A stretch of 64,000 nt of DNA from Octopus sinensis (taxonomy: Eukaryota): contig NC_043007.1 in assembly GCF_006345805.1 (NCBI RefSeq), positions 64,604,001 to 64,668,000 on the forward strand. Direction: 5' to 3'. Under the pieces are notes generated by a model. It did no database searches and was not told the origin of the DNA. It saw only the letters and a program-made list of their open reading frames with translations. This document shows positions 12,900-64,000 of the stretch, piece by piece (within the stretch, counting starts at the first letter, position 1; each line of letters begins with the position of its first letter). The translations under genes were made by a program, and so were the position numbers.

Positions 12900-13469
12900 G
12901 ATTATGACAATAGAAATATCATTAATAATAATGATAACGTACAGTAATGTGATGGTGATAATAACAAAAGTAGAGATAATGATATTGGTGATAGTGATAA
13001 TAGTGGTAGTGATTGCAGTGTATATTCATCAGTGTAACAAACTACTGCTTTCTTCTTTATTTCAGAAACATTTATGTCTATCCAATTTGGAAAGACATTT
13101 TTTGTTTCTGCTTTTTCTATAAAGCAACAGACCTGTTATCTTTAATAATTATTCAATTTCAGTGGGAAGTGCCAACAAACAAGGTTAAACTTTGTGTTAA
13201 CATTACTTTTTTAAAGATCTCTCTTCCATTTTTTAAAAGAAAAGAAATATGCTTCAATTCCTTATCAAACCGGATAATAATAATGATTAAAAAGAAAACA
13301 ACATAAATAAAGAATTTGGTGAGCGAGAGAGGAATAAAAAAAAATCAGAAAAGGGTATGCTTTTTGAAAAGAATATGTGAAGGTGTATCATGAATTGATA
13401 CATAAACCTTTGCAGACTATCAAAGTCATATTTGCTGATTAAAGTAATTTGTAATCTACAAAATCTTAC

Positions 13470-13682
13470 CCTTTTACTTTTTCCAGAGAGCTTTACACTA
13501 AGCTTCCGCTTAACATCGCTCCCTGCCTCTGAGTGGATACTCATGCGATCACTCAAGTCTCCTTTGTCTGCAGCATCCACTGTGACAGCAGGCAGTTCGA
13601 CACTTTTACATGAATAGTCTGATGTACTGCGAACTATTGCCTCTTCTCTACTTTTCTCTTCACACTGTTTCTCTTCTTCTTG
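13470..13682 (-). CDS. para: Nav1 exon in cytoplasmic I-II loop
   Basis: aaactttcacag|CAA GAA GAA... to ...AAA AGG|gtaaga; 213 nt, phase 0, continuing the acidic helix of the previous exon; QEEEKQCEEKSREEAIVRSTSDYSCKSVELPAVTVDAADKGDLSDRMSIHSEAGSDVKRKLSVKLSGKSKR. YSCxS and (D/E)RMSIxS resemble the Drosophila para loop as I recall it. The 3' boundary could instead be 13497. Confidence 0.85.
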
Positions 13683-13752
13683 CTGTGAAAGTTTAATGTT
13701 AGTATCAAATTTTACTTGTCGTTACAGTAAAGAAATAAAACAGTAATAAAAA

Positions 13753-18445: not shown

Positions 18446-19330
18446 AACAAGAAGATGGAATGAACAAGCTTTAATCATAAATCACAACAATTGTTTCTAT
18501 GCATTATTAACATCTGTTAGTTGCTAAGTTATCCATATTATACATATTATTATATGAATATTATATAAATATGATCCAGCAGTAGCTGCGTACTCACATG
18601 TCATCAAATGAGTAGCTTTGAAGTGAATAAAGATATGTATGTGTATAAAGGTGTGGGTGAATAAATTTCTTCCTGTGTGATAGCATCTATTAATGACTGA
18701 TTAAGCAACTGTGATGGAAGCCAAGGATGGCTGAAATTAAGTTTCACAAAAAAACTGGCAGACAAGTTGGTATCCCACTGGAGTACTAAGGTGACCATGC
18801 ATCCTTTGTAGAAAAAAACTTATAGACAAAAAAGATAACAAATCTTTCTAGCTAATATTATGGCATTTTAGTGTGTTAATCTATCTTCATGAAAAGTGGG
18901 GCATATTTATACTAAAAAAAAAGACTGAATTTGAGGTTTTACTAATTTATATTTGATATATTTGCTTTTTATTTTTATTTCCATTGACTTGTATTGGTCT
19001 ATTTATTTTATAATATACATTTTCATATTTTTATTTCCATTAATATTTTTGGCATTCTTTATGACATATGTCTGTTTGAATATACACGTTGCTCTCTATC
19101 AAGGGAATGCTAAAAATATTATTTGGGTATAAAACAATGGGAAGCTGGATGAGATCTCGCAGTACTTCTGAAGCTACTCACCTGATGATGTGTTGAGTAC
19201 ACAGCTACTGCTGGATAATATTCATATAGTAATATGTATAATATGGAAAATTCAGCAACTAACAGATGTTATTAATGCATAGAAACAATTGTTGTGATTT
19301 GTGACTAAAGCTTGCTCATTTCATCTTGTT
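18446..19330. repeat. Inverted repeat (arms ~18446-18625 and ~19163-19330, ~540-bp spacer) with hammerhead motifs
   Basis: Arms share long reverse-complementary blocks, e.g. aatcacaacaattgtttctatgcatt / aatgcatagaaacaattgttgtgatt, and atccagcagtagctg / cagctactgctggat. Confidence 0.92.
19171..19312 (+). ncRNA. Putative type I hammerhead ribozyme motif with intact core (antisense to Nav1)
   Basis: Stem I UCAC(19178-81)/GUGA(19294-97); CUGAUGA 19182-88; stem II UGUGU/GCAUA with long loop; GAAAC 19282-86; palindromic AAUU; GUU triplet 19291-93; distal AAGCU/AGCUU pairing. Motif match only; activity untested. Confidence 0.6.
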
Positions 19331-19355
19331 ACACACACACACACACACACACACA

Positions 19356-19721
19356 CCAAAATTAGAGAATAGAGTAGATAAAATCCAAGCTACATGTTTC
19401 ATAGCTAGAACCTCAGAAGTAATAATTACCCAAACAAGGGGTAATCCACAAGCTACTCATCAGGCCAAAGATAACTTGGTCAAATGAAGGTTACATTGTC
19501 GTCAAGGGATTTCATGTTAACTTACTGGAGATTTGGTCAAAAATAAAATTGATAAAATCTCCTACAAATTAACATGGTATCCCTTCATTTGACCAAGGTA
19601 TATTTGGCTTGATGAGTAGGTAGTGGATTACCCCTTGTTTGAGTAATTACTACATCCAAGGTTCTGCAAGCTATGAATCATATGTGGCCTTGATTTTATC
19701 TATTCCATTCCCTAATTTTGG
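19356..19721. repeat. ~365-bp foldback element (arms ~19356-19490 and ~19582-19721; spacer also self-complementary)
   Basis: ccaaaattag...caaatgaagg versus ccttcatttg...ctaattttgg; inner gggatttcatgttaa/ttaacatggtatccc and ggagattt/aaatctcc pairs. Confidence 0.92.
19383..19472 (-). ncRNA. Putative minimal type I hammerhead ribozyme with intact core on the Nav1 sense strand
   Basis: Minus strand: AUCU-UU-GGC CUGAUGA GUAGCU [..AUUACCC/GGGUAAU hairpin..] AGCUAU GAAA CAUG UA GCU-U-GGAU. All core nucleotides are canonical; the helix III loop is the palindrome CAUG, as in Penelope-associated minimal hammerheads. Confidence 0.7.
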
Positions 19722-19916
19722 ATTTTTATTTGCATACACAGCAACCCCAGCTGCTGACAGTGAATTATAAAATAACTTTTTACAGCTTAAAAATTTACAA
19801 CTTTTTAAGTCAATAAACCACTGTTGTTCCTGAAAGTTGTTTTTTATACATCCTTTGGACTGCTCGAAGCTTATTAACTTCATACACCTTGATGTTTGGA
19901 TCTTACCTTTAGACAT

Positions 19917-19970
<54 letters not shown>

Positions 19971-20462
19971 TCATTATTTTAACATCCACTTTTCCATGCC
20001 TAGCATGCATCAGACAGCATTCATTGAGGCAAATTCTCTATGACTGAATGCTCCTCCTGACATCAATCTTCACTTGCTTCCAAGCAAGGTAATATTTCCA
20101 ATATTTCCCCATGACCATACATATTTCCATGGAAAATTGCAAACAAATGACATTGTTCGCATGATGGTGACATTTGTTTACAATTGTCAAGCAGAGGAGT
20201 CACAAACTTACATACATATATATACAATGGGTTTCTTTCCATATCTAGCCAGAAAATCCATTCACAAAACTTTGGGAGGCATGGGGCTATAGCAGAATAC
20301 ACTTGTGCAAGGTGGAATACAATGGGACTGGACCTGAAACCATGTAGTTGCAAACTTGCATGTGCAGTGAGAGTTAACAGTGACCTCTCACTGCACATGC
20401 AACTGTGTGCTGCCATCTGTTGATGCCCTACAGAACAAGTCCATGAACTTTTGACACCACCT

Positions 20463-23058: not shown

Positions 23059-25099
23059 AGGAAACTAGGGATTGGTCAATGAGGAAACTAGGGATTGGTC
23101 AATGAGGAAACTAGGGATAGATGAATGGCTGGTGAGGACTGTGCAAGCCATGTACAGAGATGCCGTAAGTAAGGTTAGGGTTGGCAACATGTACACAGAA
23201 GAATTCAAAGTAGAGGTTGGGGTCCACCAGGGTTCAGTACTCAGCCCCCTCCTATTTATCATAGTACTCCAGGCAATTACGGAGGAATTCAAGACAGGCT
23301 GTCCCTGGGAGCTCCTCTACGCTGACGACCTTGCTCTTATTGCTGAGTCACTATCAGAACTGGAGGAGAAGTTCCAGGTGTGGAAGGAGGGTTTAAAATC
23401 AAGGGGCCTTAGAGTCAACCTAGCTAAAACCAAAGTACTAATAAGTAGAAAGGTAGACAATCCACAAATATCTTCAGGAAGATGGCCCTGCTCGATCTGT
23501 AGAAAAGGTGTAGGTAGAAACTCTATAAGATGTACCCAGTGTAAGCTATGGACACATAAGAGGTGCAGCAATGTCAAAGGTAGGCTAACTGGGAAGATAG
23601 TTTTGTATGTGGCAGATGCTCGGGAGCATTAACCTCCGAAAATCTGCAGAAAACAACTTCCGTTCCTTTCAGGGGGAAAAACTAGAAGTAGTTGATAGCT
23701 TCCGTTATCTAGGTGACCAAGTCAGTAGTGGGGGTGGGTGTGCTGAAAGTGTAACTGCTAGAATAAGAATAGCCTGGGCAAAGTTTAGGGAGCTCTTACC
23801 TCTGCTGGTGACTAAAGGCCTCTCGCTCAGAGTAAAAGGCAGACTGTATGATGCGTGTGTACGAACAGCCATGCTACATGGCAGCGAAACATGGGCCTGA
23901 CTGCTGAGGACATGCGTAAGCTCGTGAGGAATGAAGCCAGTATGCTCCGATGGATGTGTAATGTCAGTGTACATACTCGCCAGAGCGTTTGCACCTTGAG
24001 AGAAATGTTGTACCTAAGAAGCATCAGTTGTGGTGTGCAAGAGAGACGATTGCGCTGGTATGGTCATGTGGCGAGAATGGATGAAGATAGGTGTGTGCGA
24101 AAGTGCCAATCCCTAGCAGTTGAGGGAACCCGTGGGAGAGGTAGACCCAGGAAAACCTGGGACGAGGTGGTGAAGCACGACCTTCGAACTTTAGGCCTCA
24201 CTGAGGAAATGACCAGAGACCGAGACCTTTGGAAGTATTCTGTGCGTGAGAAGACCAGGCAGGACAAGTGAGCCCAGCCCACTTATGAATGCCTTCCCTC
24301 CCTTGGACACAAAGACCGGCTGAGGCAAGCGAAGTCGATATAGAACCTCATCCGACGACAGACACCCATGCCAACCCCCCATGCTTGCGAAGACATGTTG
24401 GGGCAAGCGAAATCGAAATCGAAACCGAATTGAACCAGCCAGGATCCCTGGCCTGGTGGTACGTAAAAAGCACTATCCGACTCATGGCCGTGGCACGTAA
24501 AATACTCCAATGCGACCGTACGACAGGCACCCATGCCAACCTCCTTTGCTTGTGAAGACATGTTGGGGCAAGCGAAATCGAAATCGAATTGAACCAGCCA
24601 GGATCCCTGGTCTGGTGGTACGTAAAAGCACTATCCGACTCGTGGCCGTGGCACGTAAAATACTCCAATGCGACCGTACGACAGGCACCCTTGCCAACCC
24701 CCTTTGCTTGTGAAGACATGTTGGGGCAAGCGAAATCGAAATCGAATTGAACCAGCCAGGATCCTGGTCTGGTGGTACGTAAAAGCACTGGTACGTAAAA
24801 AGCACTATCCAACTCGTGGCCGATGCCAGCACCGCCCGTCTGGCTTCCGTGCCGGTGGCACATAAAATACACCAATCTGACCGTGGCCGTTGCCAGCCCC
24901 GCTGGCACCTGTGCAGGGGCACGTAAAAAGCACCCACTACACTCACGGAGTGGTTGGCGTTAGGAAGGGCATCCAGCTGTAGAAACATTGCCAAATTAGA
25001 CTGGAGCCTGGTGCAGCCTTCTGGCTTCCCAGAACCCGGTCGAACCGTCCAACCCATGCTAGCATGAGAACGGACGTTAAACGACGATGATGATGATGA

Positions 25100-37915: not shown

Positions 37916-38582
37916 GAAGAGTGGCAGAATTGTTGGCTGTCATAGAACAACATTGAGGATTGCTTGCAATTTTGCAAGGATGATAAAAATTGAATTATGG
38001 AAGATAGCTTAAAGTCATGTTTAATTACTAAACATCAATTAAACATTTGGTATCTAATGCTCCTTTAATTAATTTTCTATCAAACAACTGTCAGTATAAA
38101 GCTGTTGCATGAGTAAAGTAATGCTGGTATTCAGATGATGCTTTAAAGTACAGCCATAAACTCTAAAACTTATCTGGACGTTCTGAAGAATTAAGTTTCT
38201 TGAACATATGATAATCTTTAATTGCACTATATTCTAATAAGATGGTTCATCCAGTCATTCTGCAAAACCACTTAGATTTAATCTTATTATTTTATTGGAC
38301 TGATAGTCAGAATAGTCTGCTAACCTGAAGCATACAAAAATTGTGTAGGTTCATACAAAAAGGAAAATTGTAGCTTTAATTCTTTATTAATTTCAGATCT
38401 AAATGAGAAGAAATCACAGGTTTGAAGACACAAGGTTCTGCAAAAACTTAGTTAAAAGAGTAACTGATGCATTGCTGCTGTTGTACTGGAAGCAAAGGTG
38501 TATATCAGATATGAACACTATGATGTTGTACTTTTGTTCAAAGCTTTCAGGTTACCTACTTATTTTAATATTAAGTATACTT

Positions 38583-38945
38583 CATCTGAGCGTGATCGTT
38601 GCCAGAGTGGCTATCTGGCCCCTGGCCAGTGGCACGTAAAAGACACCATTCAAGTGTGATTGTTACCAGCATCGCCTTACTGGCACCTGTGCCGGTGGCA
38701 TGTGTAAAAGGATTCTAGTGAAGTCATTGCCAGTACCATCTGACTGGCCCTGTGCCGATGGTACATAAAAGCACCCACCACACTCTTGGAGTGGTTGGCG
38801 TTAGGAAGGGCATCCAGCTGTAGAAACTCTGCCAGATCAAGATTGAAGCCTGGTGCAGCCATCTGGTTCACCAGCCCTCAGTCATTCGTCCAACCCATGC
38901 TAGCATAGAAAGTGGACGTTAAACGATGATGATGATGATGATGAC
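38583..38945 (+). mobile_element. RTE 3' UTR fragment with (GAT)n tail
   Basis: Matches 24830-25102 (ggagtggttggcgttaggaagggcatccagctgtagaaac...ccaacccatgctagcat...gacgttaaacgatgatgat). Confidence 0.85.
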
Positions 38946-44202: not shown

Positions 44203-44606
44203 CAATGATGATGATAATAATAGTTTAATAGAAACTTAACTATATTGGAAGAAATCACTAAACATTCATAGTTAATTACAAAACACTAAAACTAGCTTTA
44301 AAAGATACCAACAAACATTAAGAAATGTTAATAAATGTTAACACTAGTTTTTAGGGGAACATTAAACATTCAGGACTATTGATGAAATGTTAAAACTAAT
44401 TTTTAATATGTTACTAAGCATTCAGGGACAGTGAAAACAAAGGCAGTACTCATCTGGTTAAAAATTGATAAAATATCAAATATTTCAAGTTGACCAAATT
44501 TTTTTTATTATAACTGATATCTTGAGACAGTAGTGAAATTAAAGGTGTTAAAAAACAATAAACTAGTTGGGAAAGGGCTTAAAATTGCCTGAAAATAATT
44601 ACTAAC

Positions 44607-44771
44607 CTTCCGTTCGGCTTCCTCTTCTTCAGCATCTGCTTGGTCTTGTTTCTGTTGCTCATCATAAGACATGGCAACAATGGCTAATATTAAATTAACC
44701 AGATAGAAAGATCCCAGAAAGATGACCAAAATAAAGAATAATGCATGAATGGGACCCTCAGCTCGTATAAC
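44607..44771 (-). CDS. para: Nav1 exon encoding DI S6 and start of I-II loop
   Basis: tttttttgatag|GTT ATA CGA... to ...CGG AAG|gttagt; 165 nt; [55 protein letters not shown]. Confidence 0.98.
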
Positions 44772-47389: not shown

Positions 47390-47740
47390 GAAAGTGGTTT
47401 GATCATGAACCAGAGGTTGTGATAAAAAATAAAAATTTCAGGATATTATGGGACTTCTCAGTAGAGATTGACTATATCATTGAAACAAGAAGATCAGTGT
47501 TATTAAAGAGGACAAAATAAACAGCGTAAGATTTTACAGTTCCCTATACTTACAGAATCAATACTAAAGCAATTGAAAGAGCCTGTGGAAAACTAAAACA
47601 ACAAGTATTCCCATAGCAATTGGTGCATTTGGCACAACACCCAAAATGCTACCTATGAGACTGAAAGATATTGGAATTGGGATCATCCTGTATTCTGTAA
47701 GATTCTTAAGAAAGACTCTTGAGATTTGAAGAGACTTTTT
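47390..47740 (+). mobile_element. REL-endonuclease fragment of an R4-like non-LTR element
   Basis: WFDHEPEVVIKNKNFRILWDFSVEIDYIIETRR... resembles W..H.P..V.EN....ILWDF...TD..I..RRPD. Confidence 0.6.
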
Positions 47741-47796
47741 ATCAACAAACCTCAAGATAACATCCCTGCTAATTGAATTAGCATGTAAAAGCTTCG

Positions 47797-47872
47797 CCCT
47801 CCTCCTCCTCCTCCTCCTCCTCCTCCTCCTACTACTACTACTACTACTACAACCACCACCACCACCACCACA

Positions 47873-47914
<42 letters not shown>
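47797..47914. repeat. Compound trinucleotide microsatellite (CCT)n(ACT)n(ACC)n(ACT)n
   Basis: Directly visible. Confidence 0.95.
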
Positions 47915-47915
<1 letters not shown>

Positions 47916-48463
47916 AATGCCCTGATGTAGAATATGGCTGTGGCTCTCATGGCTTCTGATCTTAACTGATTGGAAGTGTTATCATGTACGTTGCTTTGTC
48001 TTGGCATAAAAGATGAGCTACAGCAAATATTCTGATCAATACCATAGATTTGCTTGTCAGTTGTTTGACCCTAACCAGTTGAGCATGTTCCTTAGTGGCT
48101 GACAATATGTACATCCTTGATCATGTGCAGAAGAAGTGGGGGAGCATCACAGCCATGTGTTGAGAGGAATTCTTTGGGATTTGGGATAATTCACCTCTGG
48201 TAACATAGGTGTTTCTTTCAACATCCTTAAACAACCCTTATCCAGGGACCTTTTGAGCAGGATGGGCTACTCAACCTGAAGAAAATTCTAACTGGGCCCC
48301 ACACGCATTATTTATCTTGATATGAGATCACCATGTCACTCACACATGGTTGTGATGCATGTGCCTGGTGTATCTTTATCAGACAGGTAGTCATGATGGG
48401 TATGCTGGGCTTTGTACATTTTACCCCAGTATCACTTTGATGGCATGCACTGCTCTCTCACTC

Positions 48464-48506
<43 letters not shown>

Positions 48507-48832
48507 GTGATAACTGTTGTTAACAGAACTATGAGACCAACAAATTTGATGTGTGTTGGGGAGGAGAAGTTAGTCATCTAAACTGACCCCAGTATTTGAG
48601 TGATAATAATGATTCCTAACATAGATACAAGGTCACAAATGGTTAATCAATTAATTTATTGGTTCTGGAAAAATGAAAGTAAAGTCAACCTTGGCAGGAT
48701 TTGAATTCAGAAAGTTACTAAAGAGCTATAACTAAACAATACAAGGTATTTTATCTGACACACTAATGATTCTGCTAAATAACAATATAGAGAAAAATCT
48801 AGTACTTAATTAAATAACAAATATTATCTTAC

Positions 48833-48977
48833 AAGCTGGTATAAATTTTCCCAATAATCTTGCGTCATCAATCGAAAGGCACATAACATAGCCCAGGCAA
48901 AGTTGTCAAAACTTGTATATCCGAAATTTGGATTATCTCCTATTTCTTGTAAACATGTGAAATTTTCAGCACATTGT
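48833..48977 (-). CDS. para: Nav1 exon encoding DI pore loop (selectivity-filter Asp)
   Basis: ttatctttcag|A CAA TGT... to ...CAG CTT|gtaaga; 145 nt; [48 protein letters not shown]. The [14 protein letters not shown] motif is Nav1-type. Coding frame not in the ORF track. Confidence 0.98.
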
Positions 48978-49186
48978 CTGAAAGATAACAAAAAACATAT
49001 ATTAATAAAAAATAAAATAATTTGGCAAATAATTATTTTCCTATGTAGAAATTACAAAAGTTTACCAAATAAATCTGAAATTATAATTTTTTTATATACC
49101 TAAAAGTACCTAAGCTGAAAAAGAATTGTATATTCATCAAACTGGTAATATAAATCTGTCTGTCTCTCTCTCTCTCTATATATATA

Positions 49187-50470
49187 TCAGGTTCAGTAAA
49201 AAGTAAACAAGGTTTTGAACCATGAAGAATTTGACCCAGATTTTTGCAGAGTTTTGGATTTTTTTTAAACAATTTTTTGCAATTGTCTGATAATACAGAC
49301 ACAGACTTGCCAAAATGCATCAATAAATTAACATTGATATTTTTTTTCACTATTGTTACAATCATCTGAAATGGAACTGTTAAAGTGCGATATTTGGGCA
49401 ATTTTGCTATTCAACTTCGAAAAAGGACATAAAGCAGCTGAAACTGCTTGCAATATCAACAAAATGTTTGGTGAGGAAATGACCAATGAGTGGTCAGCTT
49501 GAAAATGGTTTAACACTTTTGCAGTGGAGACCTGAGTCTTGAAGATCGTGAGTGTAGTGGACACCCATCTGTCATTGATGATGATCAATTAAAGACCGTC
49601 ATTGGGAAAGATCCAGGCAAAACCACTTGAGAATTGGCAAAAGTACTTCATGTTAGCCAGAAAATTGCTTGTAACCATTTGCATGCAATCAGAAAATCAA
49701 AAAAGCTCGACAAATGGGTACCATATGATTTGAATGAAAATCAGAAAATGCACAGATATGAAATTTGCTTGTTGTCTCTTCTCTGTAATCAGACCAATCC
49801 ATTTCTTGACCGTATTGTAACTTGTGATGGAAAGTGGACTCTGTACAATAATAAAAAATGTTCTTCACAGTGGTTGGACCAAAATGAAGCACTGAAAATC
49901 TTCCCTAAACCTGAGCTCTTCAAAAAGGAGGTTATGGTGACTTTGGTGGTGTACTGTTGAACTCATCCTCTATAACTTCTTAAAACCCAGAAAAACCATT
50001 ACTGCAGAAACATATTGCCATGAAATTGCCAAAATGGATGGAAAACTGCAACTCCTCTGTCCAAGACTGGTCAAAAGAAGAGGGCCAATCACTCTTCATG
50101 GCAATACTCAACCACATGTTTCACTAATGATGCTCCAGAAGTTGAGGGAACTTGACTACGAAGTTCTTCCCCACCCAGCTTATTCCCCAGACATTTCTCC
50201 TACTGACTACCACTTTTACAAGCACCTTGATAGCTAACTGTGAGAGAAGGAGTTCAAAAATCAAACCGATGCTGAAAGTGTGTTCAAAGAGTTCATCAGC
50301 TACAGAACTCCAGATTTTTATGTTACCAGAATAAACAAACTTGTAACTTGTTGGCAAAAATGTGTTGATTGTAATAATTATTACTTTGATTAATAAAATT
50401 TTGGCATTATTGAAATATATCGTGATGAATTTCATGTTTTAAAACGTTGCTTACTTTTTACTCAGCCTGA
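49187..50470 (+). mobile_element. Full-length (1284 bp) mariner element with inactivated transposase
   Basis: TA at 49185-86 and 50471-72; TIRs tcaggttcagtaaaaagtaaacaagg / cgttgcttactttttactcagcctga; WVPYDL, IVTCDGKW, TLHGNTQPH and HPAYSPDISPTDY motifs spread over broken frames. Confidence 0.93.
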
Positions 50471-54000: not shown

Positions 54001-54416
54001 AATTAGCTCAGTACGATCCACTTGATGTGCCAATCTAATTGCAAGAATGGTTGAATGTAAAAGATTTGAAAAGGTAGGTCATCATCAGAAAAACTTTTAC
54101 TGTCATATGGAAATGTCAAAAGAATACATGATGTATACTGAGCGACATAGTTTGTCTGTAAAGGCCACAAAAATGACCACCACCAGAGTATAGGACTTCC
54201 TGTTCTTGGTGAAATATACCAATGATAAAGGTTAGGGATCAATCGAATGAAACTGTAGTCTGTGATTGTAATCCTTATTTCTCAATTTTTCTTTCACACA
54301 CACACACACACACATACATATAATGGTAGAAAGAAAGTGTGAAAGAACAAACAATAGATAAATAGATTGTTGTTATTTCAGTAAAAAAAAAAAGAAAATT
54401 GAATAACATTACATAC

Positions 54417-54477
54417 CCTGCGCCTGAAGCATTTCCACATACGAGAGTGTTTCCATAATAATCTTCACCCCAATTTT
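54417..54477 (-). CDS. para: Nav1 small exon, DI extracellular turret
   Basis: tttttctattcag|AA AAT TGG... to ...GCA GG|gtatgt; 61 nt; (E)NWGEDYYGNTLVCGNASGA(G) with the conserved CGNxS(G/D)AG motif; phase 1 in, phase 2 out. Confidence 0.95.
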
Positions 54478-56274
54478 CTGAATAGAAAAATGTAAAATTA
54501 AGTAACTGAAGGAAAATAAACAATGGGTCCAATTAAAGCATCTTTAGAAATACATAAATATATCAAATGTCTGTGTTTTTGAAATATATATACAGTATAT
54601 TTTTGTAGTACATTTATTCTGGAAATGTTTCTCTACATGTTAAAGATAATATTTTCTTTTCTAAACATACAGATAAAATCATTTAATGAGTAGATTGCAA
54701 GTATTTCAGATCTACAGAAAGAAAGAAGATAGTGCATATTTTCTAAAGTAATAAAAAATTTACAATATTGTTAAAGTTTGTAAATTTTGATAATTTCAAA
54801 TTTTGTTGGAAAACATGAGTGTTGAGGTTCTGATCATTAGTTATTGGCAAGTTTCCTCAGACTCTGATTTTATTTGTTATTTACAAGTATTTATTAAATA
54901 ATTAGGTGAATGAAATTTTGGTCTCATAGTTCAAGAGCTTGTATGTGGTTACTTAAATGTTGTAATCTGTTCAAGATAAGACAATACAAATATCTGGTTC
55001 AAATAACTGACAACAGAGGAAGAAATGAAACAGATTGACAGTGATGTAGTGTTCAACTAATATATAACTGATGAATAGTTTGGTAATTTTTAATACTAAA
55101 CTGAATCCTTCTTTTACACAAGAATAATTGAAACTATGATGAAAAGAGAGAAAATTAACAAAATAGAGTTACTACTTGCCATGAATTGATATAGAATTGT
55201 GGTAGCCATTTAAAACATATGCACATCATTATATTCACTTTTGCTTTATTTTATAATACCATGCTATGAATGAATTAACAGCTAAGGTTTTCAATGTAAA
55301 ATGATATTTAATATTATGAGCACTATTTTGAAACAGAAAAGAGTAATAAACTCACAGACATTGACCAATAGTATTTTTTCTGTCTTAATGCTTGTGGTAT
55401 TTAATGCCATTTTAGTATTATACATTAAGCTTTTATCACAGTTTTTATATACTCTTATGACCTGGTCACTGATATTCTATTCTAGAGTATGTATTAGAAG
55501 TCATTCGTTGGTCAGATCCTGACAGGCCATGGAGGAGGTTTGTTTATTTTTTATATTCTTCTATTCCTTTATTTTCTGTCTCATTACCTATTGACAAACA
55601 TACACTTTATAGTATTATAGCAAAGCATATCATTGACTTGGCCATAGATGCACAATGAAAGATTTGATAATTAATAATACATAAAGCTATTACAAAATAA
55701 AAGGGAGTGAGAGTATCAATGTGTTTTAAATAGCGACATAGCTCTATATGAAGCAAGTGTTTCAGTTTCAATACAAGATCTCTAAAACAAATCCTTCGTT
55801 AAACAAGTACTTCACAATTAATTTTGTTATAAAATTCAATAATCTAATACATTGTAATGCTAAACAATTAAGTTATAGTGTAAGTTTTTTAAGTTTCCAA
55901 ACATTTTCAGTAAGATTACAATATTTCAGACTGGATTCAAATCCAGCTTGTTACGATCCAATAATAAAAAACCTGATAAGTGGAGATCTAATTGAAATAT
56001 ATTGTAGAAATATTGTTGATAAAAATACTGAAAATTGCTTCATCTTTAAAAGATGGGGTTAATTATCTGAAAAATTATCTTGTTAACAGCAAGTAATCTC
56101 AGATGTTTAGGCATTTAATTTTCGCTAAACTTAAGTTTCTGTTTGATATGACATGAAACTAATCACTTTCGCTATCATATCACAATGTTGCATGAGACTA
56201 ATGTATTTTCCCCTTTTAGATAGCACTCAAAAAATAGATGAATCAGTCTCAAATATAAACAGGCATATTGCAAG

Positions 56275-56440: not shown

Positions 56441-56746
56441 ACTGCAAGTAGTCATTTCTTCCACAGTATGAATTGATCTTGGTGTATCAAGCCAATGAAT
56501 TATTTGTCAAGTTACAGAAGTGAATTATATCTCAATATACCTATTTAGATTTGTGTAAATTTAATAATTGAGAGTTAGGCATCTTGGACACAAATTCATG
56601 CATTATTAGTGAAACAATCTGAACTGTGGACCAATCAAGTGGTTGTTTGGTACTGACTGATTTGATCATCCATTTTCTCAGATACACCAGTAGAGAGGAG
56701 AAAAATAAAATAAAAAAGTGCAGTATGTATTTTATGTTCCTCTTAC

Positions 56747-56950
56747 CTTTATTTAAAACATGTTCCATCCACTCTTCATCTGTGATATTTTCATTATCGA
56801 CAATATCTCTAATACACTTGCTACGTAATGTTCCTTGGTAGAGTTGCATACCAATTAGTGCAAAGATGGACAACATGAAGCACGTAAGTATCATTACATC
56901 TCTTAACCGTCTGACGGCTTCTAATAAGGCACCCACGATTGTTTTTAAAC
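56747..56950 (-). CDS. para: Nav1 exon encoding DI S4-S5 linker, S5 and start of extracellular turret
   Basis: gtgttcacag|GT TTA AAA... to ...AAT AAA G|gtaaga; 204 nt; (G)[67 protein letters not shown]. Confidence 0.98.
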
Positions 56951-57169
56951 CTGTGAACACAAATAAATAAGCAAATTAGTAATTTGTACAAAGCATTTCT
57001 ATTTTACCTTATCTACTTGTCACCACTGAAGAAGAATAGAAATGAACAAAAGGTAAACAACAAAGAAAACAAAAATTATTGCTAGAAATTTAAGCTAGAA
57101 ATGAATAGGAATATAAGCCCCCATCTCAACAGAGTAAAATGATAGCACTCTAAATGTAGGCACATAGAA

Positions 57170-59707
57170 AGGTAGGTCTAGCGAGATTGTAGAGATGCTT
57201 GAACGGAGAGTGTTGATGTATGTTGCGTACAAGAGGTAAGATGGGGAGGAGCTTCAGCCAGAGTCCTCAAAGGCAAAGCACATAGGTATAAACTCTTCAG
57301 GGTAGGTAATAGTGATGGAATAGGGGGTGTGGGCATACTTCTTGCAGAGAAATGGGTGGATAAGGTCATAGAGGTAGTGAGGGTGTGCGATCGAGTACTT
57401 AAACTCAGGCTAATCTTGCAGAATGGTATAGCTACAATTATCTCTGCCTATGCCCCACAAACAGGTCTACCAAATGAATAGAAGGATCACTTTTATGATA
57501 TTTTTCTGCAGGCTACTTTAAAGATGAGTTACAATGATCTCATCTTTGTGGCTGGAGATTTTAATGGGCATGTCGGACAGCAATCTGGTATCTTCCAAGG
57601 TGTACATGGGGGCCATGAAGTTGGTACCAGAAATGAAGAGGGAACTAGGTTCCTGGAGTTCTGCAATGCAAATAACCTATTGATCTGCAACACCAACTTC
57701 AGGAAGCCAGCTAGCCACCTGATAACCTATCAATCAGGTGACTCTGCTAGACAGATTGATTTCATCCTCACCAGATAGCGGGATACATTCCCTGGTGAAG
57801 AATGCACCCCACAACATAGAATAGTTATTAGTGACTTTAGACTTTTGGCCAGAAGGATGCCAAAAAGCAGACCAAACTGGAAAAGGACTTGTAAGCTTAG
57901 GAACACTTCATATAGTCAGAGATTTAGGGATATCCTTACCGAGAAATTTGATAATAGGGAGGAGGAGCTACAGTCCTGTGACATAGAAAGCAGCTGGGAA
58001 TTCCTGCAAGACAGCTTGCTGAGTGCCACAGACCAAATCTGTGGTTGGTGCAATGTCCCTTCCAGACCTAGGGTAACATAGTGGTGGAACAATTCTGCAG
58101 ACAGGGCCATTAGAGGAAAGAAACAGGCTTGGAATGCCTGGTAGCAGGAAAATGTATCAGATAGCCAAAAGGAAAGCTAAGAGACAGGTATATATAGCCA
58201 AGGGAGTAGCAGGAAAGAAGTTTGCCAATGTTCAGCGATATGAGGATCAAAGACCTGAAGTATTTCGGATTGCAAGATAGTGTGTGAGAGAAAACAGTGA
58301 TGTCATAGGAGAGAAATGTGTCCGCATGGATGATGGTGCCCTTGCATTTAATGATTCTGCAAAGAAAGAGGTTTGGAGAAGCCATTATGAAAGACTGCTG
58401 AATGTGGAGAATGAATGGGAGGAGGAGAGTCTGCCAAAGGTTGACCCAATTGAGGAACCAGCTATCCGAATCAACAGTACTCAGGTAGATAAAGCAATTA
58501 AGGATATGAAGACAGGGAAAGCACCTGGCCCATCAGGAATCACTGCTGAGATGCTTAAAATATCAGGCGGTGTGGGTTATGGTCTTGTCACCCGCATCAT
58601 AAATCAGGTAGTTAGTGAAGGAGTCATACCAAATGACTGGTGTCGCAGCACCATAGTCAACTGCTACAAGGGGAAAGATGATGCTTTAGATAGAAATAAC
58701 TACAGGGGTATCAAATTATTGGATCAGGTGATGAAAGTTACAGAGAGAGTCATAGCCCAACTAATTAGGGAGAGAGTTAGCCTAGATGAGATGCAGTTCG
58801 GTTTTGTGCCAGGCAGAAGCACCACTAATGCTATATTTCTGGTAAAGCAACTGCAGTTGAAGTACCTAGCCAAAGATAAACCTCTGTACTTGGCTTTTGT
58901 TGACTTGGAGAAAGCCTTTGACAGGGTCCCCCCGATCCCTTATCTGGTGGTCTCTGCAGAAACTGGGGATACACCAGTGGCTGGTAAGAGCTGTACAAGC
59001 CCTGTACAAGCCCTGTACAGGGATGCTGTCAGTATGGTGAGGGTTGGCAATGAGTATAGTGAAGAATTCCGAGTAGAAGTAGGGGTTCACCAAGGATCAG
59101 TCCTCAGCCCCCTCTTATTCATCATAGTCCGCCAGGCAATAATAGAGGAATCCAAGACAGGTTGCCCCCGGGAGCTCCTCTATGCTGATGATCTTGCTTT
59201 AATAGCTGAGTCACTGCCAGAACTGGAGACGAAATTTAGGGTGTGAAAGCAAGGTCTAGAATGAAAGAGCCTTAGGGTAAACCTAGCAAAATCATAAGTC
59301 TTAGTAAGTAAGAAGGCTGTCAAATCACAACCTGCTTCAGATAGATAGCTCTGCTCAATCTGTAGAAAAGGTGTGGGTAGAAACTCCATACGATGGACAC
59401 ATAAAAGGTGCAGCAATATCAAAGGAAGGTTAACCAGGAAAATAGTTTTTGTGTGTGGTAGATGCACTGGGGCAATAAACACTGAAGACATACAGAAAAA
59501 AGATTCCATCACATGTCGGGGAAGAAACTAGAAGTAGTTAATAGCTTACACTACCTAGGTGACCAAGTCTGTAGTGGGGATGGCTGCGTTGAGAGTGTAG
59601 TGACTAGAGTAAGAATAGCATGGGCAAAGTTCAGGGAGCTCCTACCTCTGCTGGCAACTAAGTGCCTCTCGCTCAGGGTGAAAGGTAGACTGTATGATGC
59701 ATGTGTG
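57170..59707 (+). mobile_element. RTE-clade LINE relic (APE endonuclease plus RT), 3'-truncated
   Basis: GVGILL, SAYAPQ and VAGDFNGHVG endonuclease motifs (57330-57580); ORF 58284-59246 with GKAPGPSGI, NYRGIKLL, QFGF.PGRSTT, FVDLEKAFD, GVHQGS and YADDL; same family as 23059-25102. Confidence 0.95.
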
Positions 59708-59815
59708 CCACCACGTGGCACTTTGGGTAAGTGTCTTCTGCTATAGCCCTGAGCCGACCGAAGCTTTGTGATGGAGTTTGTTAGGCGGGAGTTACTGCCG
59801 TGTATGTGTGTGTGT
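59708..59815 (+). mobile_element. SINE body fragment joined to the truncated RTE
   Basis: ctttgggtaagtgtcttctgctatagccctgagccgacc matches the SINE body at 27171-27594. Confidence 0.7.
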
Positions 59816-59875: not shown

Positions 59876-60102
59876 TTTACATATTTATGCATAAATGTAT
59901 TCACATATTTAGATTTATAGAATGTATTAAATCTTATCATGTCATATACATATAAAGAAACTACATCAATCAAAATACACATATATTTACAAAGGGCATG
60001 TATATCAACTCTAACTCAATCTTCATGACTTCAGTACATTCACATATATGGAAAAAGATGGTTTAAAGGGAGGTGGGTTGATATTCAATGAGGTTCACAT
60101 AC

Positions 60103-60194
60103 CTGGAATCACTGCGACAGTTTTTAGGGCTCGAAGTACCCTGAATGTTCGTAAAGCTGATAGATTACCCAGATCAACTACTTCTGTCAAGTAT
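60103..60194 (-). CDS. para: Nav1 exon encoding DI S3-S4 voltage sensor
   Basis: ...tttttatttag|A TAC TTG... to ...ATT CCA G|gtatgt; 92 nt; [30 protein letters not shown](G) with R/K at every third position; phases match both neighbours; same length as the homologous vertebrate exon. Confidence 0.98.
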
Positions 60195-60284
60195 CTAAAT
60201 AAAAAAATATAGATACCTTTAAATTATAGTTATAAATATAATCCATTGTCGATTGTCATTATAATACACACACACACACACACA

Positions 60285-61192
60285 CAATAAGTATCCAGAT
60301 TGTTACTGATCAATAAGTACCCAGATTGTTACTATAGTAATGAAGCTAAAGCATGGAGAGTGAAGCCACTTGGTACAGACTGACTGTGAACTCTGTTGTG
60401 CATGTTCACTAAGTTTTAATGCTTCAGCTCACTTCTGCTGTTTACAGCAGTGTTTGGAAGGAAGGTGTGTAGCATGTAATTGTTGCATTGACCATGACAG
60501 AGAAAGTTGAGCAGAAAAGCATCAAATTTTGCCAAAAGCTTGATGATGCCGCCTCAGAGGTCTATGCAAAGTTTCCAAGAAGTTTTCATCATTCTCAACA
60601 CAATCAAGGAGATCTTGTGCAACTGAAACCTGACTGTCCTTTTGGTCGGCTGAAAGCAATTTTGGCACAAACTTGGCAGACACATCTCACGTCCAAATCT
60701 TCAGTGATGATAGATTAAACTGAGCCATAACTAATCTGCACATCCTCTGATAACTCAAAGATGGTGACTTGATGATTTTCCCCTCATAGCTGCACACACA
60801 TCAGCAATGTTTCTCTCAGTTCCACTGGTTGTGTTTCTCCCAGAACATTCATCAATATCAACATTTTTTTGGCCATCTTGACGATGTCTGAACCACTTGT
60901 ACACTTGTGTGTGGCCCATACACTCCTCTCCATATACTTCCTGCAACTTTGTGTAGGCCTCTGAACAGTTATCACCATGAAAACTTTCTCTGTCATGGTC
61001 AATGCGACAATCACACGCTTCACACCTTCCTTCCAAGCACTGTTGTAAACAGCGGAAGTGAGTTAGAATGTTTAAATTTAATGTGCATGCACAGCAAAGT
61101 TCAAGGTCAATCTGTGTCAAGCAGCTTCACTCTGCATGCTTTAGCTACGTTACTATGGCAACAATCCGAATACTTATTGATCAGGCCTCGTG
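60285..61192. mobile_element. Foldback composite of two mariner 5' ends in converging orientation
   Basis: Plus part (about 60285-60570) reads 5' TIR then MTEKVEQKSIKFC; minus part (about 60570-61192) reads 5' TIR (cacgaggcctgatcaataagta), then HTH-like GDNCSEAYTKLQEVYGEECMGHTQVYKWF; about 220 bp of reverse-complementary arms. Confidence 0.8.
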
Positions 61193-62330: not shown

Positions 62331-63097
62331 TGAATGTATAAGTGATCTTCAGTTTATATATATTTGTTCATGCATCATTATGCATAGCTGGATGGTTTTG
62401 TATTTGAATTGCCAGAATAGTTTTCTGTTTTACAGTTAGATATTATTTCCAGTATCAAAGACTAAAAATGTAAAGCTGGCTATATTCAGCTCATCAATTG
62501 GCATGGTTTTAAAACATCAAGTCTTGGATCAATAATTCAGCTCAAATCTGGAGCTTAACTCAATTTCCAAAATGTCAAGTGTTGGGAGTAACATTTCCTC
62601 TTAGATAAATAGCTAGTCCAATTCTGCTTTCTTACTCAGAGATAGGCTTCAGCCCCAACAATTAAAAATTGTGAGTAATCAACTGTGGCATTACATTCAA
62701 TTAGTTCAATGCACTAAAACTGTCAAACCTGCCAATTTTGTTAACCTGATATTTATTTGAATATAAGGGATGAGACACAAAGTTAAGCTCAGTGGAATTT
62801 GAACTATAGAAAGTTAAATTCCAAACAAGTCAGCAAATACTGACAGTAATTTTTTATCTCTCAAAAAAAGAAAAAAGACAAAAAAACCTTTTTTCTGTGC
62901 TAGAAGAAATTAAATTAATGCATACACAAAAATAAATATATAAAAGAAACAAGGCAATTTTGCTTCCTCTGAAAATAGATTTGCTTTAAAAAATATTTAT
63001 TTGATATTTTATAATATCACAGCCTATTGTAGCATAAATGAATTATTTAAATCAAAAATATAAAAGAAAAAAAGCATCTTTTTAAAAAATGACTTAC

Positions 63098-63226
63098 GCT
63101 AAACCAATGACTACGAAATCCAACCAATTCCAGGCATCTCTGAGGTATGTAAAGGGTTCTAAGATAAATCCTCGGGCAAACAATTTTATTAATGCCTCAC
63201 ATGTGTAGATTCCGGTAAATACATAT
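63098..63226 (-). CDS. para: Voltage-gated sodium channel alpha subunit (Nav1/para-type), exon encoding DI S2-S3
   Basis: Minus strand: ...tttttctag|A TAT GTA TTT... to ...GGT TTA GC|gtaagt; 129 nt; translates (E)[42 protein letters not shown](A), with the classic Nav LRDxWNWLDF motif. Not in the ORF track. Confidence 0.97.
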
Positions 63227-64000
63227 CTAGAAAAATTCAACAAAAGAATATATGATTATTTTGTTAAAGAATAAAAGATTTCAGAATATTAGAGAAATGA
63301 AAATCCAATGATTAGAGTCAACGATTTTTATAATGAAAGTAAAAGAAAACCAATTTCTGCTTGTAGGCAAAGCAGATATAATATACACTCTTAATATCTC
63401 TTTATAATTGCATTGTTTTTATCTTTTCTAAAAATTTCAGTTTGTAGCAGTGGATAATATTTCAATAACAGAAAAAATTCAGAAAGTTTTGGAAGGATTT
63501 GATATGGAACTTGTGAATCATTCAACTGCTATGTGAAACTTTAATTGACACCTTTATTTCCTGTTGCTTTTTATTTACTGTACAGAAAAAAAAAAGAAAA
63601 AGAAAAAAAACTAGTGCTTGAGCTTAAATATTTTTTTATAATATAACATAAGATTACACATTGTCATTTGAACATTCAATTTGTTCACACATTTTTGTTT
63701 CTTATCTCAGAAGACATACTTTTACTGTTTGGCACCTTTACTACCTCAAACCCCTTAATCTATTTCTAATTAAACAGAATGGGACATGTGAACATAATTT
63801 GTAAATATAGTTTAGAATTCAGTAAGAGATCTGGATTGAGGAATAAAAATAGGATGAGAGATAAAATAACTGTCAATTTCTTGGGCCCCAAGTGGCCAAC
63901 TGTTTTCCTTATTCTTTAAGCTTGCTCTATGTAAATGAGTGACTATAGAAAAAGATGAACATTAAAAGTTAGGATACTGGTTTCACAAACTAAGGCAATA

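What the first reader, a model, noticed from the sequence alone, without database searches (positions are those of the whole stretch)
19383..19472. Intact minimal hammerhead core on the sense strand of the sodium-channel pre-mRNA
Seen: the minus strand reads AUCUUUGGC CUGAUGA GUAGCU...AGCUAU GAAA CAUG UA GCUUGGAU, with an unmutated core, a 6-bp stem II base (G-U closing), a nested AUUACCC/GGGUAAU hairpin and a stem I with an internal loop; predicted cut between 19391 and 19390. The partner arm (19606-19689, plus strand) has three core changes (UUGAUGA, GAAUC, GUG). Inference: if active it would nick the 31-kb intron co-transcriptionally and could affect splicing or channel expression. Against: helix III needs dimerisation, no second intact same-strand copy is adjacent, and the foldback may sequester it.
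Basis: partly seen in the sequence, partly recalled or inferred. Interest (0 to 1): 0.72.

Follow-up and report, generated by a model that had tools for sequence, protein, structure and literature searches.

The report
Decayed retroelement hammerhead in channel intron
A genuine hammerhead-ribozyme-like motif sits in an intron of a sodium-channel gene, but it looks like an ordinary decaying leftover of a Penelope-type mobile element that is locked inside a long RNA hairpin, so it is very unlikely to cut the channel's pre-mRNA.

Summary
The minus strand 19472->19383 carries CUGAUGA, a 6-bp helix II, GAAA, a GUA cut site (19391|19390) and a bipartite helix I. It lies in sense orientation in the ~31-kb intron after the domain-I S6 exon of a voltage-gated sodium-channel gene. 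A motif-tailored descriptor hit 1 of 3107 shuffled windows.

Helix III is only the palindrome ACAUGU. That is the dimer-dependent "minimal" type I hammerhead described for Penelope-like elements (PLEs) and animal retrozymes. The motif lies 35 nt from the outer end of one arm of a 366-bp head-to-head inverted duplication (19356-19721) that abuts an (AC)13 microsatellite, and the other arm carries a degenerate copy on the opposite strand. Both arrangements are published PLE signatures.

Nothing supports activity:
- The 10.1-11.1 pair is G-U, not G-C.
- No Rfam hammerhead model matches.
- The hammerhead fold is not the predicted fold even for the isolated 90-mer.
- In context a -204 kcal/mol hairpin sequesters it, and forcing the hammerhead helices costs 87 kcal/mol.
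- No same-strand dimer partner exists.
- Core divergence between the arms equals the background.

Verdict: a probably inactive PLE-type hammerhead relic. No other copies of the element could be retrieved, so family membership is not proven.

The parts
19356..19721 (.). 366-bp head-to-head inverted duplication (foldback). Two arms of about 183 nt meet near 19539, and both end in ...CTAATTTTGG. No target-site duplication is visible.
   Evidence: Self reverse-complement BLAST, 74% over 388 columns. Inverted repeats I1/I2. Arm alignment with 141 matches, 25 mismatches and 25 gap columns. RNA fold -204.2 kcal/mol, z -24.
19383..19472 (-). HHR1: type I hammerhead-like motif with an intact 13-nt core, in sense to the channel gene.
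   Evidence: Direct reading. Descriptor hit, with 1 hit in 3107 shuffled windows. No Rfam hammerhead match at E<=10.
19457..19463 (-). Core box CUGAUGA (positions 3-9).
19401..19456 (-). Helix II: GUAGCU (19456-19451) pairs with AGCUAU (19406-19401), 6 bp closed by G10.1-U11.1. It encloses a 44-nt insert with the hairpin AUUACCC/GGGUAAU.
   Evidence: Both arms have U at position 11.1.
19391..19400 (-). GAAA box (19400-19397), self-complementary ACAUGU (19397-19392), which is helix III only in a dimer, and A17 (19391). The predicted cut is between 19391 and 19390.
   Evidence: The ACAUGU/ACAUGU duplex is -4.6 kcal/mol.
19356..19390 (-). Helix I 3' strand (19390-19383) followed by the rest of the 35-nt tail that runs to the outer end of the arm.
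19464..19472 (-). Helix I 5' strand, AUCUUUGGC (3 bp, a 2x1 internal loop, then 4 bp with 19390-19383).
19606..19694 (+). HHR1': degenerate copy in the other arm (UUGAUGA, GAAUC, and G at the cut-site position).
19331..19356 (.). (AC)13 microsatellite abutting the outer end of the HHR1 arm.
   Evidence: Tandem Repeats Finder.
19173..19302 (+). HHR2: a second, weaker hammerhead-like motif of unrelated sequence. Core 19182-19188, helix II 5 bp around an 83-nt insert, GAAA 19282-19285, palindrome ACAAUUGU 19285-19292, cut after 19293. A 37-nt tail runs to the same (AC)13, so it lies tail-to-tail with HHR1.
   Evidence: Descriptor hit. No homology to the arms. Helices I+II only -0.2 kcal/mol. No Rfam match.
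44511..44771 (-). Context: ORF piece holding the domain-I S6 exon of the sodium-channel gene, the upstream boundary of the intron.
   Evidence: Pfam Ion_trans profile positions 200-240. ORF list.
13290..13721 (-). Context: ORF piece that probably holds the next exon (I-II linker-like, Ser/Lys/Glu-rich). It is about 5.7 kb downstream of the predicted cut.
   Evidence: ORF list. No Pfam match, so this assignment is an inference.

Best explanation
HHR1 is most likely a relic of a Penelope-like-element (PLE) or retrozyme-type minimal hammerhead.

Proposed history (inferred): an RNA 3' end carrying the ribozyme about 35-115 nt from its terminus was reverse-transcribed into the intron at or beside a (CA)n microsatellite. 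The result was a head-to-head inverted pair of about 183-nt copies. This could arise by priming on both DNA strands or by snap-back of the cDNA. The two arms have since drifted apart by about 15%. One arm lost the catalytic core, and the other, which happens to be sense to the channel gene, kept it by chance.

Proposed behaviour in the pre-mRNA: the complementary arm is transcribed first and the two arms zip into a hairpin of about 170 bp. The hammerhead cannot form, has no same-strand partner to build helix III, and almost certainly does not cleave. The likely molecular phenotype of the locus is a long intronic double-stranded RNA, not a nick.

Shown here: the motif, the inverted duplication, the microsatellite flank, the host gene and strand, the predicted energetics, and the lack of extra core conservation. 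Inferred: the PLE origin, the insertion mechanism and the inactivity.
For: Motif and anatomy:
- Core, helices and cut site are present.
- Chance expectation is 0.0025 per window (relaxed descriptor) and 1 in 3107 (strict descriptor).
- Helix III is reduced to the palindrome ACAUGU, helix II is long (6 bp) and helix I is short and interrupted. This is the architecture published for PLE minimal hammerheads (PMC4209133, PMC6765202).

Matches to published PLE signatures:
- Two copies on opposite strands with cores about 150 nt apart. PMC4209133 reports dual minimal hammerheads 100-700 bp apart on opposite strands.
- PMC8557442 describes inverted 5'-truncated PLE copies that form inverted repeats, 30-40-bp tails, and an insertion bias for microsatellites including (CA)n. 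Here the tail is 35 nt and the flank is (AC)13.
- A PLE protein cleaves and extends both DNA strands in vitro (PMC11167929).
- PLEs are abundant in Octopus vulgaris (PMC13282606), and 235 Rfam Hammerhead_1 hits are reported in the giant squid genome (PMC6962438).
- A second hammerhead-like motif of unrelated sequence lies tail-to-tail across the same microsatellite.

Inactivity:
- G10.1-U11.1 in both arms.
- The isolated 90-mer has an MFE of -22.7 that is not the hammerhead fold (z -1.25), against -13 to -17 kcal/mol for the hammerhead shape.
- The foldback is -204.2 kcal/mol, against -117.0 with the hammerhead helices enforced, and their pair probabilities are about 0.

Neutral decay:
- Mismatch fraction is 14% in the hammerhead span, against 11% and 18% in the flanks.
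- The core has 2 of 13 substitutions plus an indel, all on one arm. The probability of that under neutrality is about 0.25.
Against: - No other copy of the element could be retrieved, so a multi-copy family, covariation and linkage to an RT/GIY-YIG ORF are all untested. The window has no second copy. The metagenome, genome and viral scans with a 19-mer shared by both arms returned only chance hits or nothing.
- No PLE ORF is in the window. The reverse-transcriptase fragments present belong to APE-type LINEs.
- No Rfam hammerhead model matches at E<=10.
- The descriptors used for the chance estimate were written after seeing the motif.
- Energy models ignore proteins, helicases, RNA editing and co-transcriptional kinetics.
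Confidence: 0.6

Rival explanations
1. Chance resemblance. The 366-bp foldback is an unrelated inverted-repeat element (a MITE or foldback DNA transposon, or a local palindromic duplication) whose arm happens to contain CUGAUGA ... GAAA with pairable flanks. There is no hammerhead ancestry.
For: - No Rfam hammerhead hit.
- The 10.1-11.1 pair is G-U.
- The hammerhead fold is not favoured even in isolation.
- At 0.0003-0.0025 hits per window, a genome of several Gb would give tens of chance hits, and this window was selected by a scan.
- Symmetric arms that meet at a central loop are typical of MITEs.
- MITE families are annotated in Octopus vulgaris (PMC13282606).
Against: - No target-site duplication flanks 19356-19721.
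- The intact arm differs from the degenerate arm by three events that all restore canonical hammerhead states, which is easier to explain if the ancestor had the core.
- The 6-nt palindrome sits exactly at helix III.
- The motif reads towards the arm end, as in PLE 3' regions.
- A second, independent hammerhead-like motif lies within 300 nt across the same microsatellite. That is very improbable if both are chance.
Confidence: 0.27
2. HHR1 is an active ribozyme that nicks the sodium-channel pre-mRNA in the 31-kb intron, dimerising in trans or after the hairpin is opened, and thereby tunes splicing or channel output.
For: - The 13-nt core is intact, the GUA cut site is allowed, and the motif is in sense orientation in the intron.
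- There are precedents for intronic self-cleaving ribozymes: the CPEB3 ribozyme modulates its host mRNA in neurons (PMC10919898), and conserved intronic hammerheads exist in amniotes (cited in PMC7229834).
- A PLE hammerhead was protein-assisted in vitro (PMC11167929), so energy models may understate activity.
Against: - There is no same-strand partner. HHR1' and HHR2 are both on the other strand.
- The foldback is 87 kcal/mol more stable, and the competing arm is transcribed first.
- A local hairpin, AGCUAU with GUAGCU across the cut site, competes with helix II.
- The 10.1-11.1 pair is G-U.
- Minimal hammerheads show very low activity even as dimers (PMC4209133, PMC6765202).
- Slow hammerhead cuts in introns do not impair splicing (PMC2995048).
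- The core shows no excess conservation between the arms.
- Retrozyme copies are depleted from introns in Xenopus, which suggests that active ones are selected against there (bioRxiv 10.64898/2026.07.22.740005).
Confidence: 0.04
3. The functional unit is the hairpin, not the ribozyme. The ~170-bp intronic double-stranded RNA acts as a substrate for ADAR editing or for Dicer/Drosha (small-RNA precursor), and the hammerhead boxes are incidental cargo.
For: - The hairpin is extremely stable (-204 kcal/mol, z -24).
- Weak sub-threshold Rfam matches to long-hairpin miRNA precursor models, for example MIR828 at 34.9 bits against a gathering score of 69.
- Long intronic inverted repeats are the classical ADAR substrates (general knowledge).
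Against: - The Rfam matches are to plant miRNA families, far below threshold. They are the generic response of hairpin models to inverted repeats, as PMC6962438 notes for the squid genome.
- The arms have decayed to 85% identity with indels, and nothing suggests selection.
- No expression, editing or small-RNA data are available here.
Confidence: 0.08

Closest known systems
Minimal (dimeric) type I hammerheads of Penelope-like elements (Cervera & de la Pena 2014, PMC4209133; Lunse et al. 2017, as summarised in PMC6765202)
   Same: - Type I topology with a CUGAUGA/GAAA core.
- Helix III reduced to a short palindrome, so only a dimer can form it.
- Long helix II, and a short helix I with an ill-defined loop.
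- Copies scattered as single truncated elements, or as pairs on opposite strands 100-700 bp apart.
- Location near the element's 3' end, with inverted 5'-truncated copies and microsatellite targets (PMC8557442).
   Different: - G10.1-U11.1 instead of the conserved G-C.
[quoted passage not shown]
- A 44-nt insert in helix II.
- No RT/GIY-YIG ORF nearby, and no family of copies could be examined.
Animal non-LTR retrozymes (PMC7229834; bioRxiv 10.64898/2026.07.22.740005)
   Same: Small (170-400 nt) non-coding units with type I hammerheads that need dimerisation. They are related to PLE pLTRs and are present in molluscs.
   Different: Retrozymes are direct tandem repeats that give circular RNAs. 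Here the two copies are inverted, not tandem, and no circular unit can be defined on one strand.
Dimer-dependent hammerheads of newt satellite 2 and Schistosoma Sm-alpha SINE-like elements (reviewed in PMC6765202)
   Same: Repeat-borne type I hammerheads with an unstable helix III that act as double hammerheads.
   Different: Those repeats are tandem or driven by Pol III promoters, and they are recognised by Rfam Hammerhead_1. Here there is no tRNA-like head and no Rfam match.
Conserved intronic self-cleaving ribozymes (amniote HH9/HH10 hammerheads; mammalian CPEB3 HDV-like ribozyme, PMC10919898)
   Same: A self-cleaving motif in sense orientation within a long intron of a gene expressed in neurons.
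   Different: Those ribozymes are monomeric, stably folded, ultraconserved across species and experimentally active. HHR1 is dimer-dependent, buried in a foldback, and shows no conservation signal.
MITE or foldback inverted-repeat elements that give long intronic hairpins
   Same: A few hundred bp, symmetric arms, a near-perfect hairpin RNA, and weak matches to miRNA-precursor models.
   Different: No target-site duplication, and each arm carries hammerhead boxes reading outward towards its end.

Membership tests
Hammerhead ribozyme (type I) | Invariant core C3 U4 G5 A6 N7 G8 A9 ... G12 A13 A14 | tested here: met
   CUGAUGA at 19463-19457 and GAA(A) at 19400-19397 on the minus strand.
Hammerhead ribozyme (type I) | A15.1-U16.1 pair and a non-G nucleotide at the cleavage position 17 | tested here: met
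   A 19397, U 19392, A17 19391. The triplet is GUA and the cut is between 19391 and 19390.
Hammerhead ribozyme (type I) | Conserved G10.1-C11.1 pair closing helix II | tested here: not met
   G10.1-U11.1. Both arms have U at 11.1, so this state is ancestral to the duplication.
Hammerhead ribozyme (type I) | Helices I and II flank the core, and the fold is thermodynamically accessible | tested here: inconclusive
   The helices can be drawn (6 bp; 3+4 bp). The hammerhead shape is -13 to -17 kcal/mol against an MFE of -22.7, and pair probabilities are about 0.
Hammerhead ribozyme (type I) | Match to curated covariance models (Rfam Hammerhead_1, _3, _II, HH9, HH10) | tested here: not met
   No hammerhead hit at gathering score over the window, nor at E<=10 with lax filters on 19300-19800 and 19100-19500. 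The 44-nt helix II insert and the missing helix III may explain the miss.
Hammerhead ribozyme (type I) | Compensatory changes in the helices among homologues | tested here: inconclusive
   Only two paralogous arms are available. Their differences weaken helix II and the nested hairpin in the plus arm and are not compensated.
Hammerhead ribozyme (type I) | Site-specific self-cleavage | not testable with these tools
   Needs in vitro transcription or end-mapping of RNA.
PLE-type minimal hammerhead / pLTR | Helix III absent or 1-2 bp, with palindromic 15.2-16.2 and loop 3 (dimer formation) | tested here: met
   ACAUGU is self-complementary, and the duplex is -4.6 kcal/mol. Criterion taken from PMC4209133.
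PLE-type minimal hammerhead / pLTR | [quoted passage not shown] | tested here: not met
   GUAGCU pairs directly from the base after A9. Criterion taken from PMC4209133.
PLE-type minimal hammerhead / pLTR | Typical genomic arrangements: paired copies on opposite strands, inverted 5'-truncated copies, a 30-40-bp tail, a microsatellite target | tested here: met
   Head-to-head arms at 19356-19721, a 35-nt tail after the cut site, and an (AC)13 flank. Criteria taken from PMC4209133 and PMC8557442. These features are suggestive, not exclusive.
PLE-type minimal hammerhead / pLTR | Linkage of at least some family copies to an RT plus GIY-YIG ORF | tested here: not met
   No such ORF is in the 64-kb window. 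The RVT_1 fragments present go with an APE-type endonuclease. Most published copies are also solo, and genome-wide linkage could not be tested.
PLE-type minimal hammerhead / pLTR | Multi-copy consensus family in the same genome | not testable with these tools
   No eukaryotic genome collection was available. 19-mer scans of metagenome, prokaryote-genome and viral contigs gave only chance hits. Three window ORFs were not on record.
Non-LTR retrozyme | Direct tandem repeats, each with a hammerhead, that define a circularisable unit | tested here: not met
   No direct repeat of the unit is present. The copies are inverted.
MITE / foldback DNA transposon | Terminal inverted repeats flanked by a target-site duplication | tested here: not met
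   Inverted termini are present, but the flanks differ (...ACACAC on the left, GATTTTTATT... on the right). An old duplication could have decayed.

The most novel reading that the evidence does not exclude
The sense-strand hammerhead is kept functional. It pairs through its ACAUGU palindrome with transcripts of sister copies elsewhere in the genome, or is freed when the hairpin is unwound or edited. It then cleaves the sodium-channel pre-mRNA about 5.7 kb ahead of the next exon. That would give cephalopod neurons a ribozyme-based control of channel output, analogous to the CPEB3 ribozyme. A related possibility is that the two hammerhead-like motifs lying tail-to-tail across one (AC)13 mark a previously undescribed microsatellite-targeted hammerhead element family in cephalopods.
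Probability: 0.04. Interest if true: 0.75.

Novelty: new member of a known kind. Interest (0 to 1): 0.22.

Why it matters
If the best explanation holds, this is one more of the thousands of retroelement-borne minimal hammerheads known to litter metazoan genomes. It matters mainly as annotation. It explains a striking 366-bp intronic hairpin in a neuronal gene, and it warns against reading an intact hammerhead core as an active ribozyme. It would add a cephalopod example of the PLE-style inverted insertion at a microsatellite. Only if cleavage or cross-species conservation were shown would it bear on regulation of the sodium channel.

Tried and rejected
- Rfam at gathering thresholds over the whole window, and at E<=10 with lax filters on 19300-19800 and 19100-19500. 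No hammerhead family matched. The only hits were sub-threshold matches of miRNA-hairpin models, caused by the foldback, and I reject them as evidence for a miRNA.
- Self-BLAST of the region against the window. No further copy of the element was found, only (CA)n matches.
- Exact-match scans with GTGGATTACCCCTTGTTTG, a 19-mer identical in both arms. Metagenome contigs gave 3 loci sharing only 19-27 nt, with GC 41-47%, which are chance hits. Prokaryotic genome contigs gave one Pedobacter chance hit. Viral contigs gave none.
- Using spurious or exon ORFs of the window as handles to fetch the same or orthologous locus (19671-19916, 20063-20416, 56541-56960).
- Looking for a tRNA-like SINE head with ARAGORN. 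None was found.
- Looking for a PLE ORF in the window. Only LINE (APE + RVT_1) and mariner fragments were found.
- Aligning HHR2 to the arms. There is no homology.
- The supplement of PMC4209133 and the Lunse et al. paper were not held, so no published PLE hammerhead sequences could be aligned or modelled.
- I ran no further search on confirming the organism.

Full report
**1. What is in the sequence**

On the minus strand, 19472->19383 reads AUCUUUGGC-CUGAUGA-GUAGCU-(44 nt)-AGCUAU-GAAA-CAUGUA-GCUUGGAU. All 13 invariant hammerhead positions are present:
- CUGAUGA at 19463-19457.
- GAA at 19400-19398.
- A15.1 at 19397 and U16.1 at 19392.
- A17 at 19391.

Helix II is 6 bp and encloses a nested 7-bp hairpin. 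Helix I is 3 bp, a 2x1 internal loop, then 4 bp. Two details need correcting. The pair closing helix II is G10.1-U11.1, not the conserved G-C. The helix II insert is 44 nt. The plus-strand partner (about 19606-19694) has UUGAUGA, a 2-nt insertion that turns GAAA-C into GAAUC, and G at the cleavage position.

**2. Chance**

A relaxed descriptor required CUGAUGA, at least 5 bp of helix II abutting a GAAA within 100 nt, a self-complementary A...U segment followed by a non-G, and at least 3 bp of helix I. It gave 0.0025 hits per dinucleotide-shuffled window (400 shuffles) against 2 in the real window. A stricter version (6-bp helix II; helix I of at least 6 bp, or 3 bp + loop + 4 bp) gave 1 hit in 3107 shuffles against 1 real hit. 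The motif is therefore not expected by chance in one window. The descriptors were written after seeing it, however, and at genome scale tens of chance hits would remain. Context therefore matters.

**3. Host gene**

Five collinear pieces of one Pfam Ion_trans domain lie on the minus strand:
- Profile positions 40-77 at about 63.1 kb.
- Positions 90-115 at 60.1 kb.
- Positions 114-157 at 56.8 kb.
- Positions 159-195 at 48.9 kb.
- Positions 200-240 at 44.6 kb.

The pore piece reads [11 protein letters not shown], typical of domain I of voltage-gated sodium channels (my knowledge). No channel-like ORF lies between 44.5 kb and a Ser/Lys/Glu-rich ORF at 13.3-13.7 kb, which is plausibly the I-II linker exon although it has no Pfam match. 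HHR1 is therefore sense and intronic in an intron of about 31 kb, roughly 5.7 kb upstream of the probable next exon. The organism was not verified.

**4. Surroundings**

HHR1 is part of a 366-bp foldback, 19356-19721. Its two arms of about 183 nt are reverse complements of each other, with 141 matches, 25 mismatches and 25 gap columns (p-distance 0.151, Jukes-Cantor 0.168). Both arms end in ...CTAATTTTGG. Each hammerhead copy reads outward, with its cut site 35 nt from the arm's outer end. The HHR1 arm abuts an (AC)13 microsatellite at 19331-19356. No target-site duplication is visible. The window holds no further copy, no tRNA-like sequence and no RT/GIY-YIG ORF. The reverse-transcriptase fragments present go with an APE-type endonuclease, and there are also mariner pieces.

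**5. A second motif**

The descriptor also hit the plus strand at 19173-19302:
- UCAC, then CUGAUGA (19182-19188).
- UGUGU ...(83 nt)... GCAUA as helix II.
- GAAA (19282-19285).
- The 8-nt palindrome ACAAUUGU (19285-19292), then U, then the cut after 19293.
- GUGA as helix I 3' strand.

Its 37-nt tail runs into the same (AC)13, so it lies tail-to-tail with HHR1. It shares no sequence with the arms, and its helices are weak at -0.2 kcal/mol. It has U10.1-A11.1 and no Rfam match. On its own it would be unconvincing. Two such motifs within 300 nt are very unlikely if both are chance, which modestly favours real hammerhead ancestry at this site.

**6. Folding**

- The isolated 90-mer has an MFE of -22.7 kcal/mol, and that fold is not the hammerhead (z -1.25). 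AGCUAU prefers the second GUAGCU, which spans the cut site.
- The hammerhead shape scores -13.0 kcal/mol, or -16.8 with the rest free to fold. Its helices have pair probabilities of 0.007 or less.
- A double hammerhead through ACAUGU/ACAUGU (-4.6 kcal/mol) would be about -31 kcal/mol, against -50 for the unconstrained dimer.
- In context, the 378-nt transcript folds into one long hairpin at -204.2 kcal/mol (z -24). Enforcing helices I and II gives -117.0, a penalty of 87 kcal/mol.
- In the pre-mRNA the complementary arm is transcribed first, so HHR1 meets its competitor as it emerges (inference).

**7. Selection**

The mismatch fraction is 14% within the hammerhead span, against 11% in the tail and 18% in the inner arm. 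The core has 2 of 13 substitutions plus one indel. All three core-breaking events are on the plus arm. For three events the two-sided probability of that under neutrality is 0.25. If the arms were identical at birth, each has diverged by about 0.084 per site. A 13-nt core then survives intact with probability of about 0.3 per arm (my calculation), so one intact arm needs no selection. Using the calibration quoted for Octopus vulgaris repeats (JC 0.09 is about 25 My; PMC13282606), the insertion would be roughly 20-25 My old. That estimate is rough and assumes the organism.

**8. Comparison with what is known**

- PLE minimal hammerheads (PMC4209133) have a helix III of 0-2 bp with a palindromic loop, so they can act only as dimers. 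They have a long helix II and a short helix I, thousands of mostly solo copies per metazoan genome, and pairs 100-700 bp apart on opposite strands. They cleave very poorly in vitro even as dimers (also PMC6765202).
- PLE insertions often include an inverted 5'-truncated copy that forms an inverted repeat, carry a 30-40-bp tail, and favour microsatellites including (CA)n (PMC8557442).
- A purified PLE protein nicks and extends both DNA strands, and its hammerhead needs the protein to cleave (PMC11167929).
- PLEs are abundant in Octopus vulgaris (PMC13282606), and 235 Hammerhead_1 hits are reported in the giant squid genome (PMC6962438).

HHR1 fits this picture in architecture and arrangement. 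It fails two sequence criteria (G10.1-C11.1 and the extra nucleotide after A9). Linkage to a PLE ORF and membership of a multi-copy family could not be tested.

**9. Consequence for the channel gene**

Experimental introns cut by a slow hammerhead are still spliced efficiently. Only a fast ribozyme abolishes splicing (PMC2995048, summarising Dye 2006 and Fong 2009). The CPEB3 ribozyme shows that an intronic ribozyme can tune a neuronal gene, but it is a conserved, monomeric, fast motif (PMC10919898). Retrozyme copies are depleted from introns in Xenopus (bioRxiv 10.64898/2026.07.22.740005). HHR1 has none of the properties needed for such a role.

**10. Verdict**

The motif is best read as a hammerhead relic of a PLE or retrozyme-type retroelement inserted as an inverted pair beside a microsatellite (confidence about 0.6). 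The main rival is a chance motif in an unrelated foldback (about 0.27). Activity on the channel pre-mRNA is unlikely (about 0.04). It is a new member of a known kind and of low interest unless cleavage or cross-species conservation is shown.

Noticed in passing
window 19173-19302 (+): A second hammerhead-like motif of unrelated sequence: CUGAUGA at 19182-19188, GAAA at 19282-19285, the 8-nt palindrome ACAATTGT, and a cut after 19293. Its 37-nt tail meets the same (AC)13 as HHR1 from the other side. The helices are weak, and there is no Rfam match.
   Followed up: partly
window 24355-24789, and about 38570-38880: A 158-bp unit repeated 2.7 times in tandem (93% matches) in a GC-richer stretch just after a LINE fragment. 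ORFs with similar peptides recur near 38.6-38.9 kb, which suggests a dispersed repeat family.
   Followed up: no
window 23072-24271 (+) and 57524-59746 (+): Two related LINE fragments inside introns of the channel gene, antisense to it. They carry RVT_1, one has a PHD-like finger, and the second is preceded by an APE-type endonuclease piece.
   Followed up: partly
window 49634-49960 (+), 60755-61120 (-): Mariner-type transposase fragments in the introns (Transposase_1, and the HTH_48 domain of Mos1-like transposases).
   Followed up: partly
window about 63097-63255, 60098-60223, 56770-56975, 54400-54532, 48827-49051, 44511-44771 (all -): Exon-bearing ORF pieces of sodium-channel domain I (S2-S3, S3-S4, S4-S5/S5, extracellular loop, pore, S6) spread over about 19 kb of the minus strand. 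Splice sites were not mapped.
   Followed up: partly
window 19466-19606 (both strands): The inner part of the foldback gives sub-threshold Rfam matches to plant miRNA-precursor models (MIR828 at 34.9 bits against a gathering score of 69). This is the generic response of hairpin models to an inverted repeat, not evidence of a miRNA gene.
   Followed up: yes
window 47564-48007 (-): An ORF with long poly-Ser, poly-Gly and poly-Arg runs, reflecting trinucleotide-type simple repeats in the intron.
   Followed up: no
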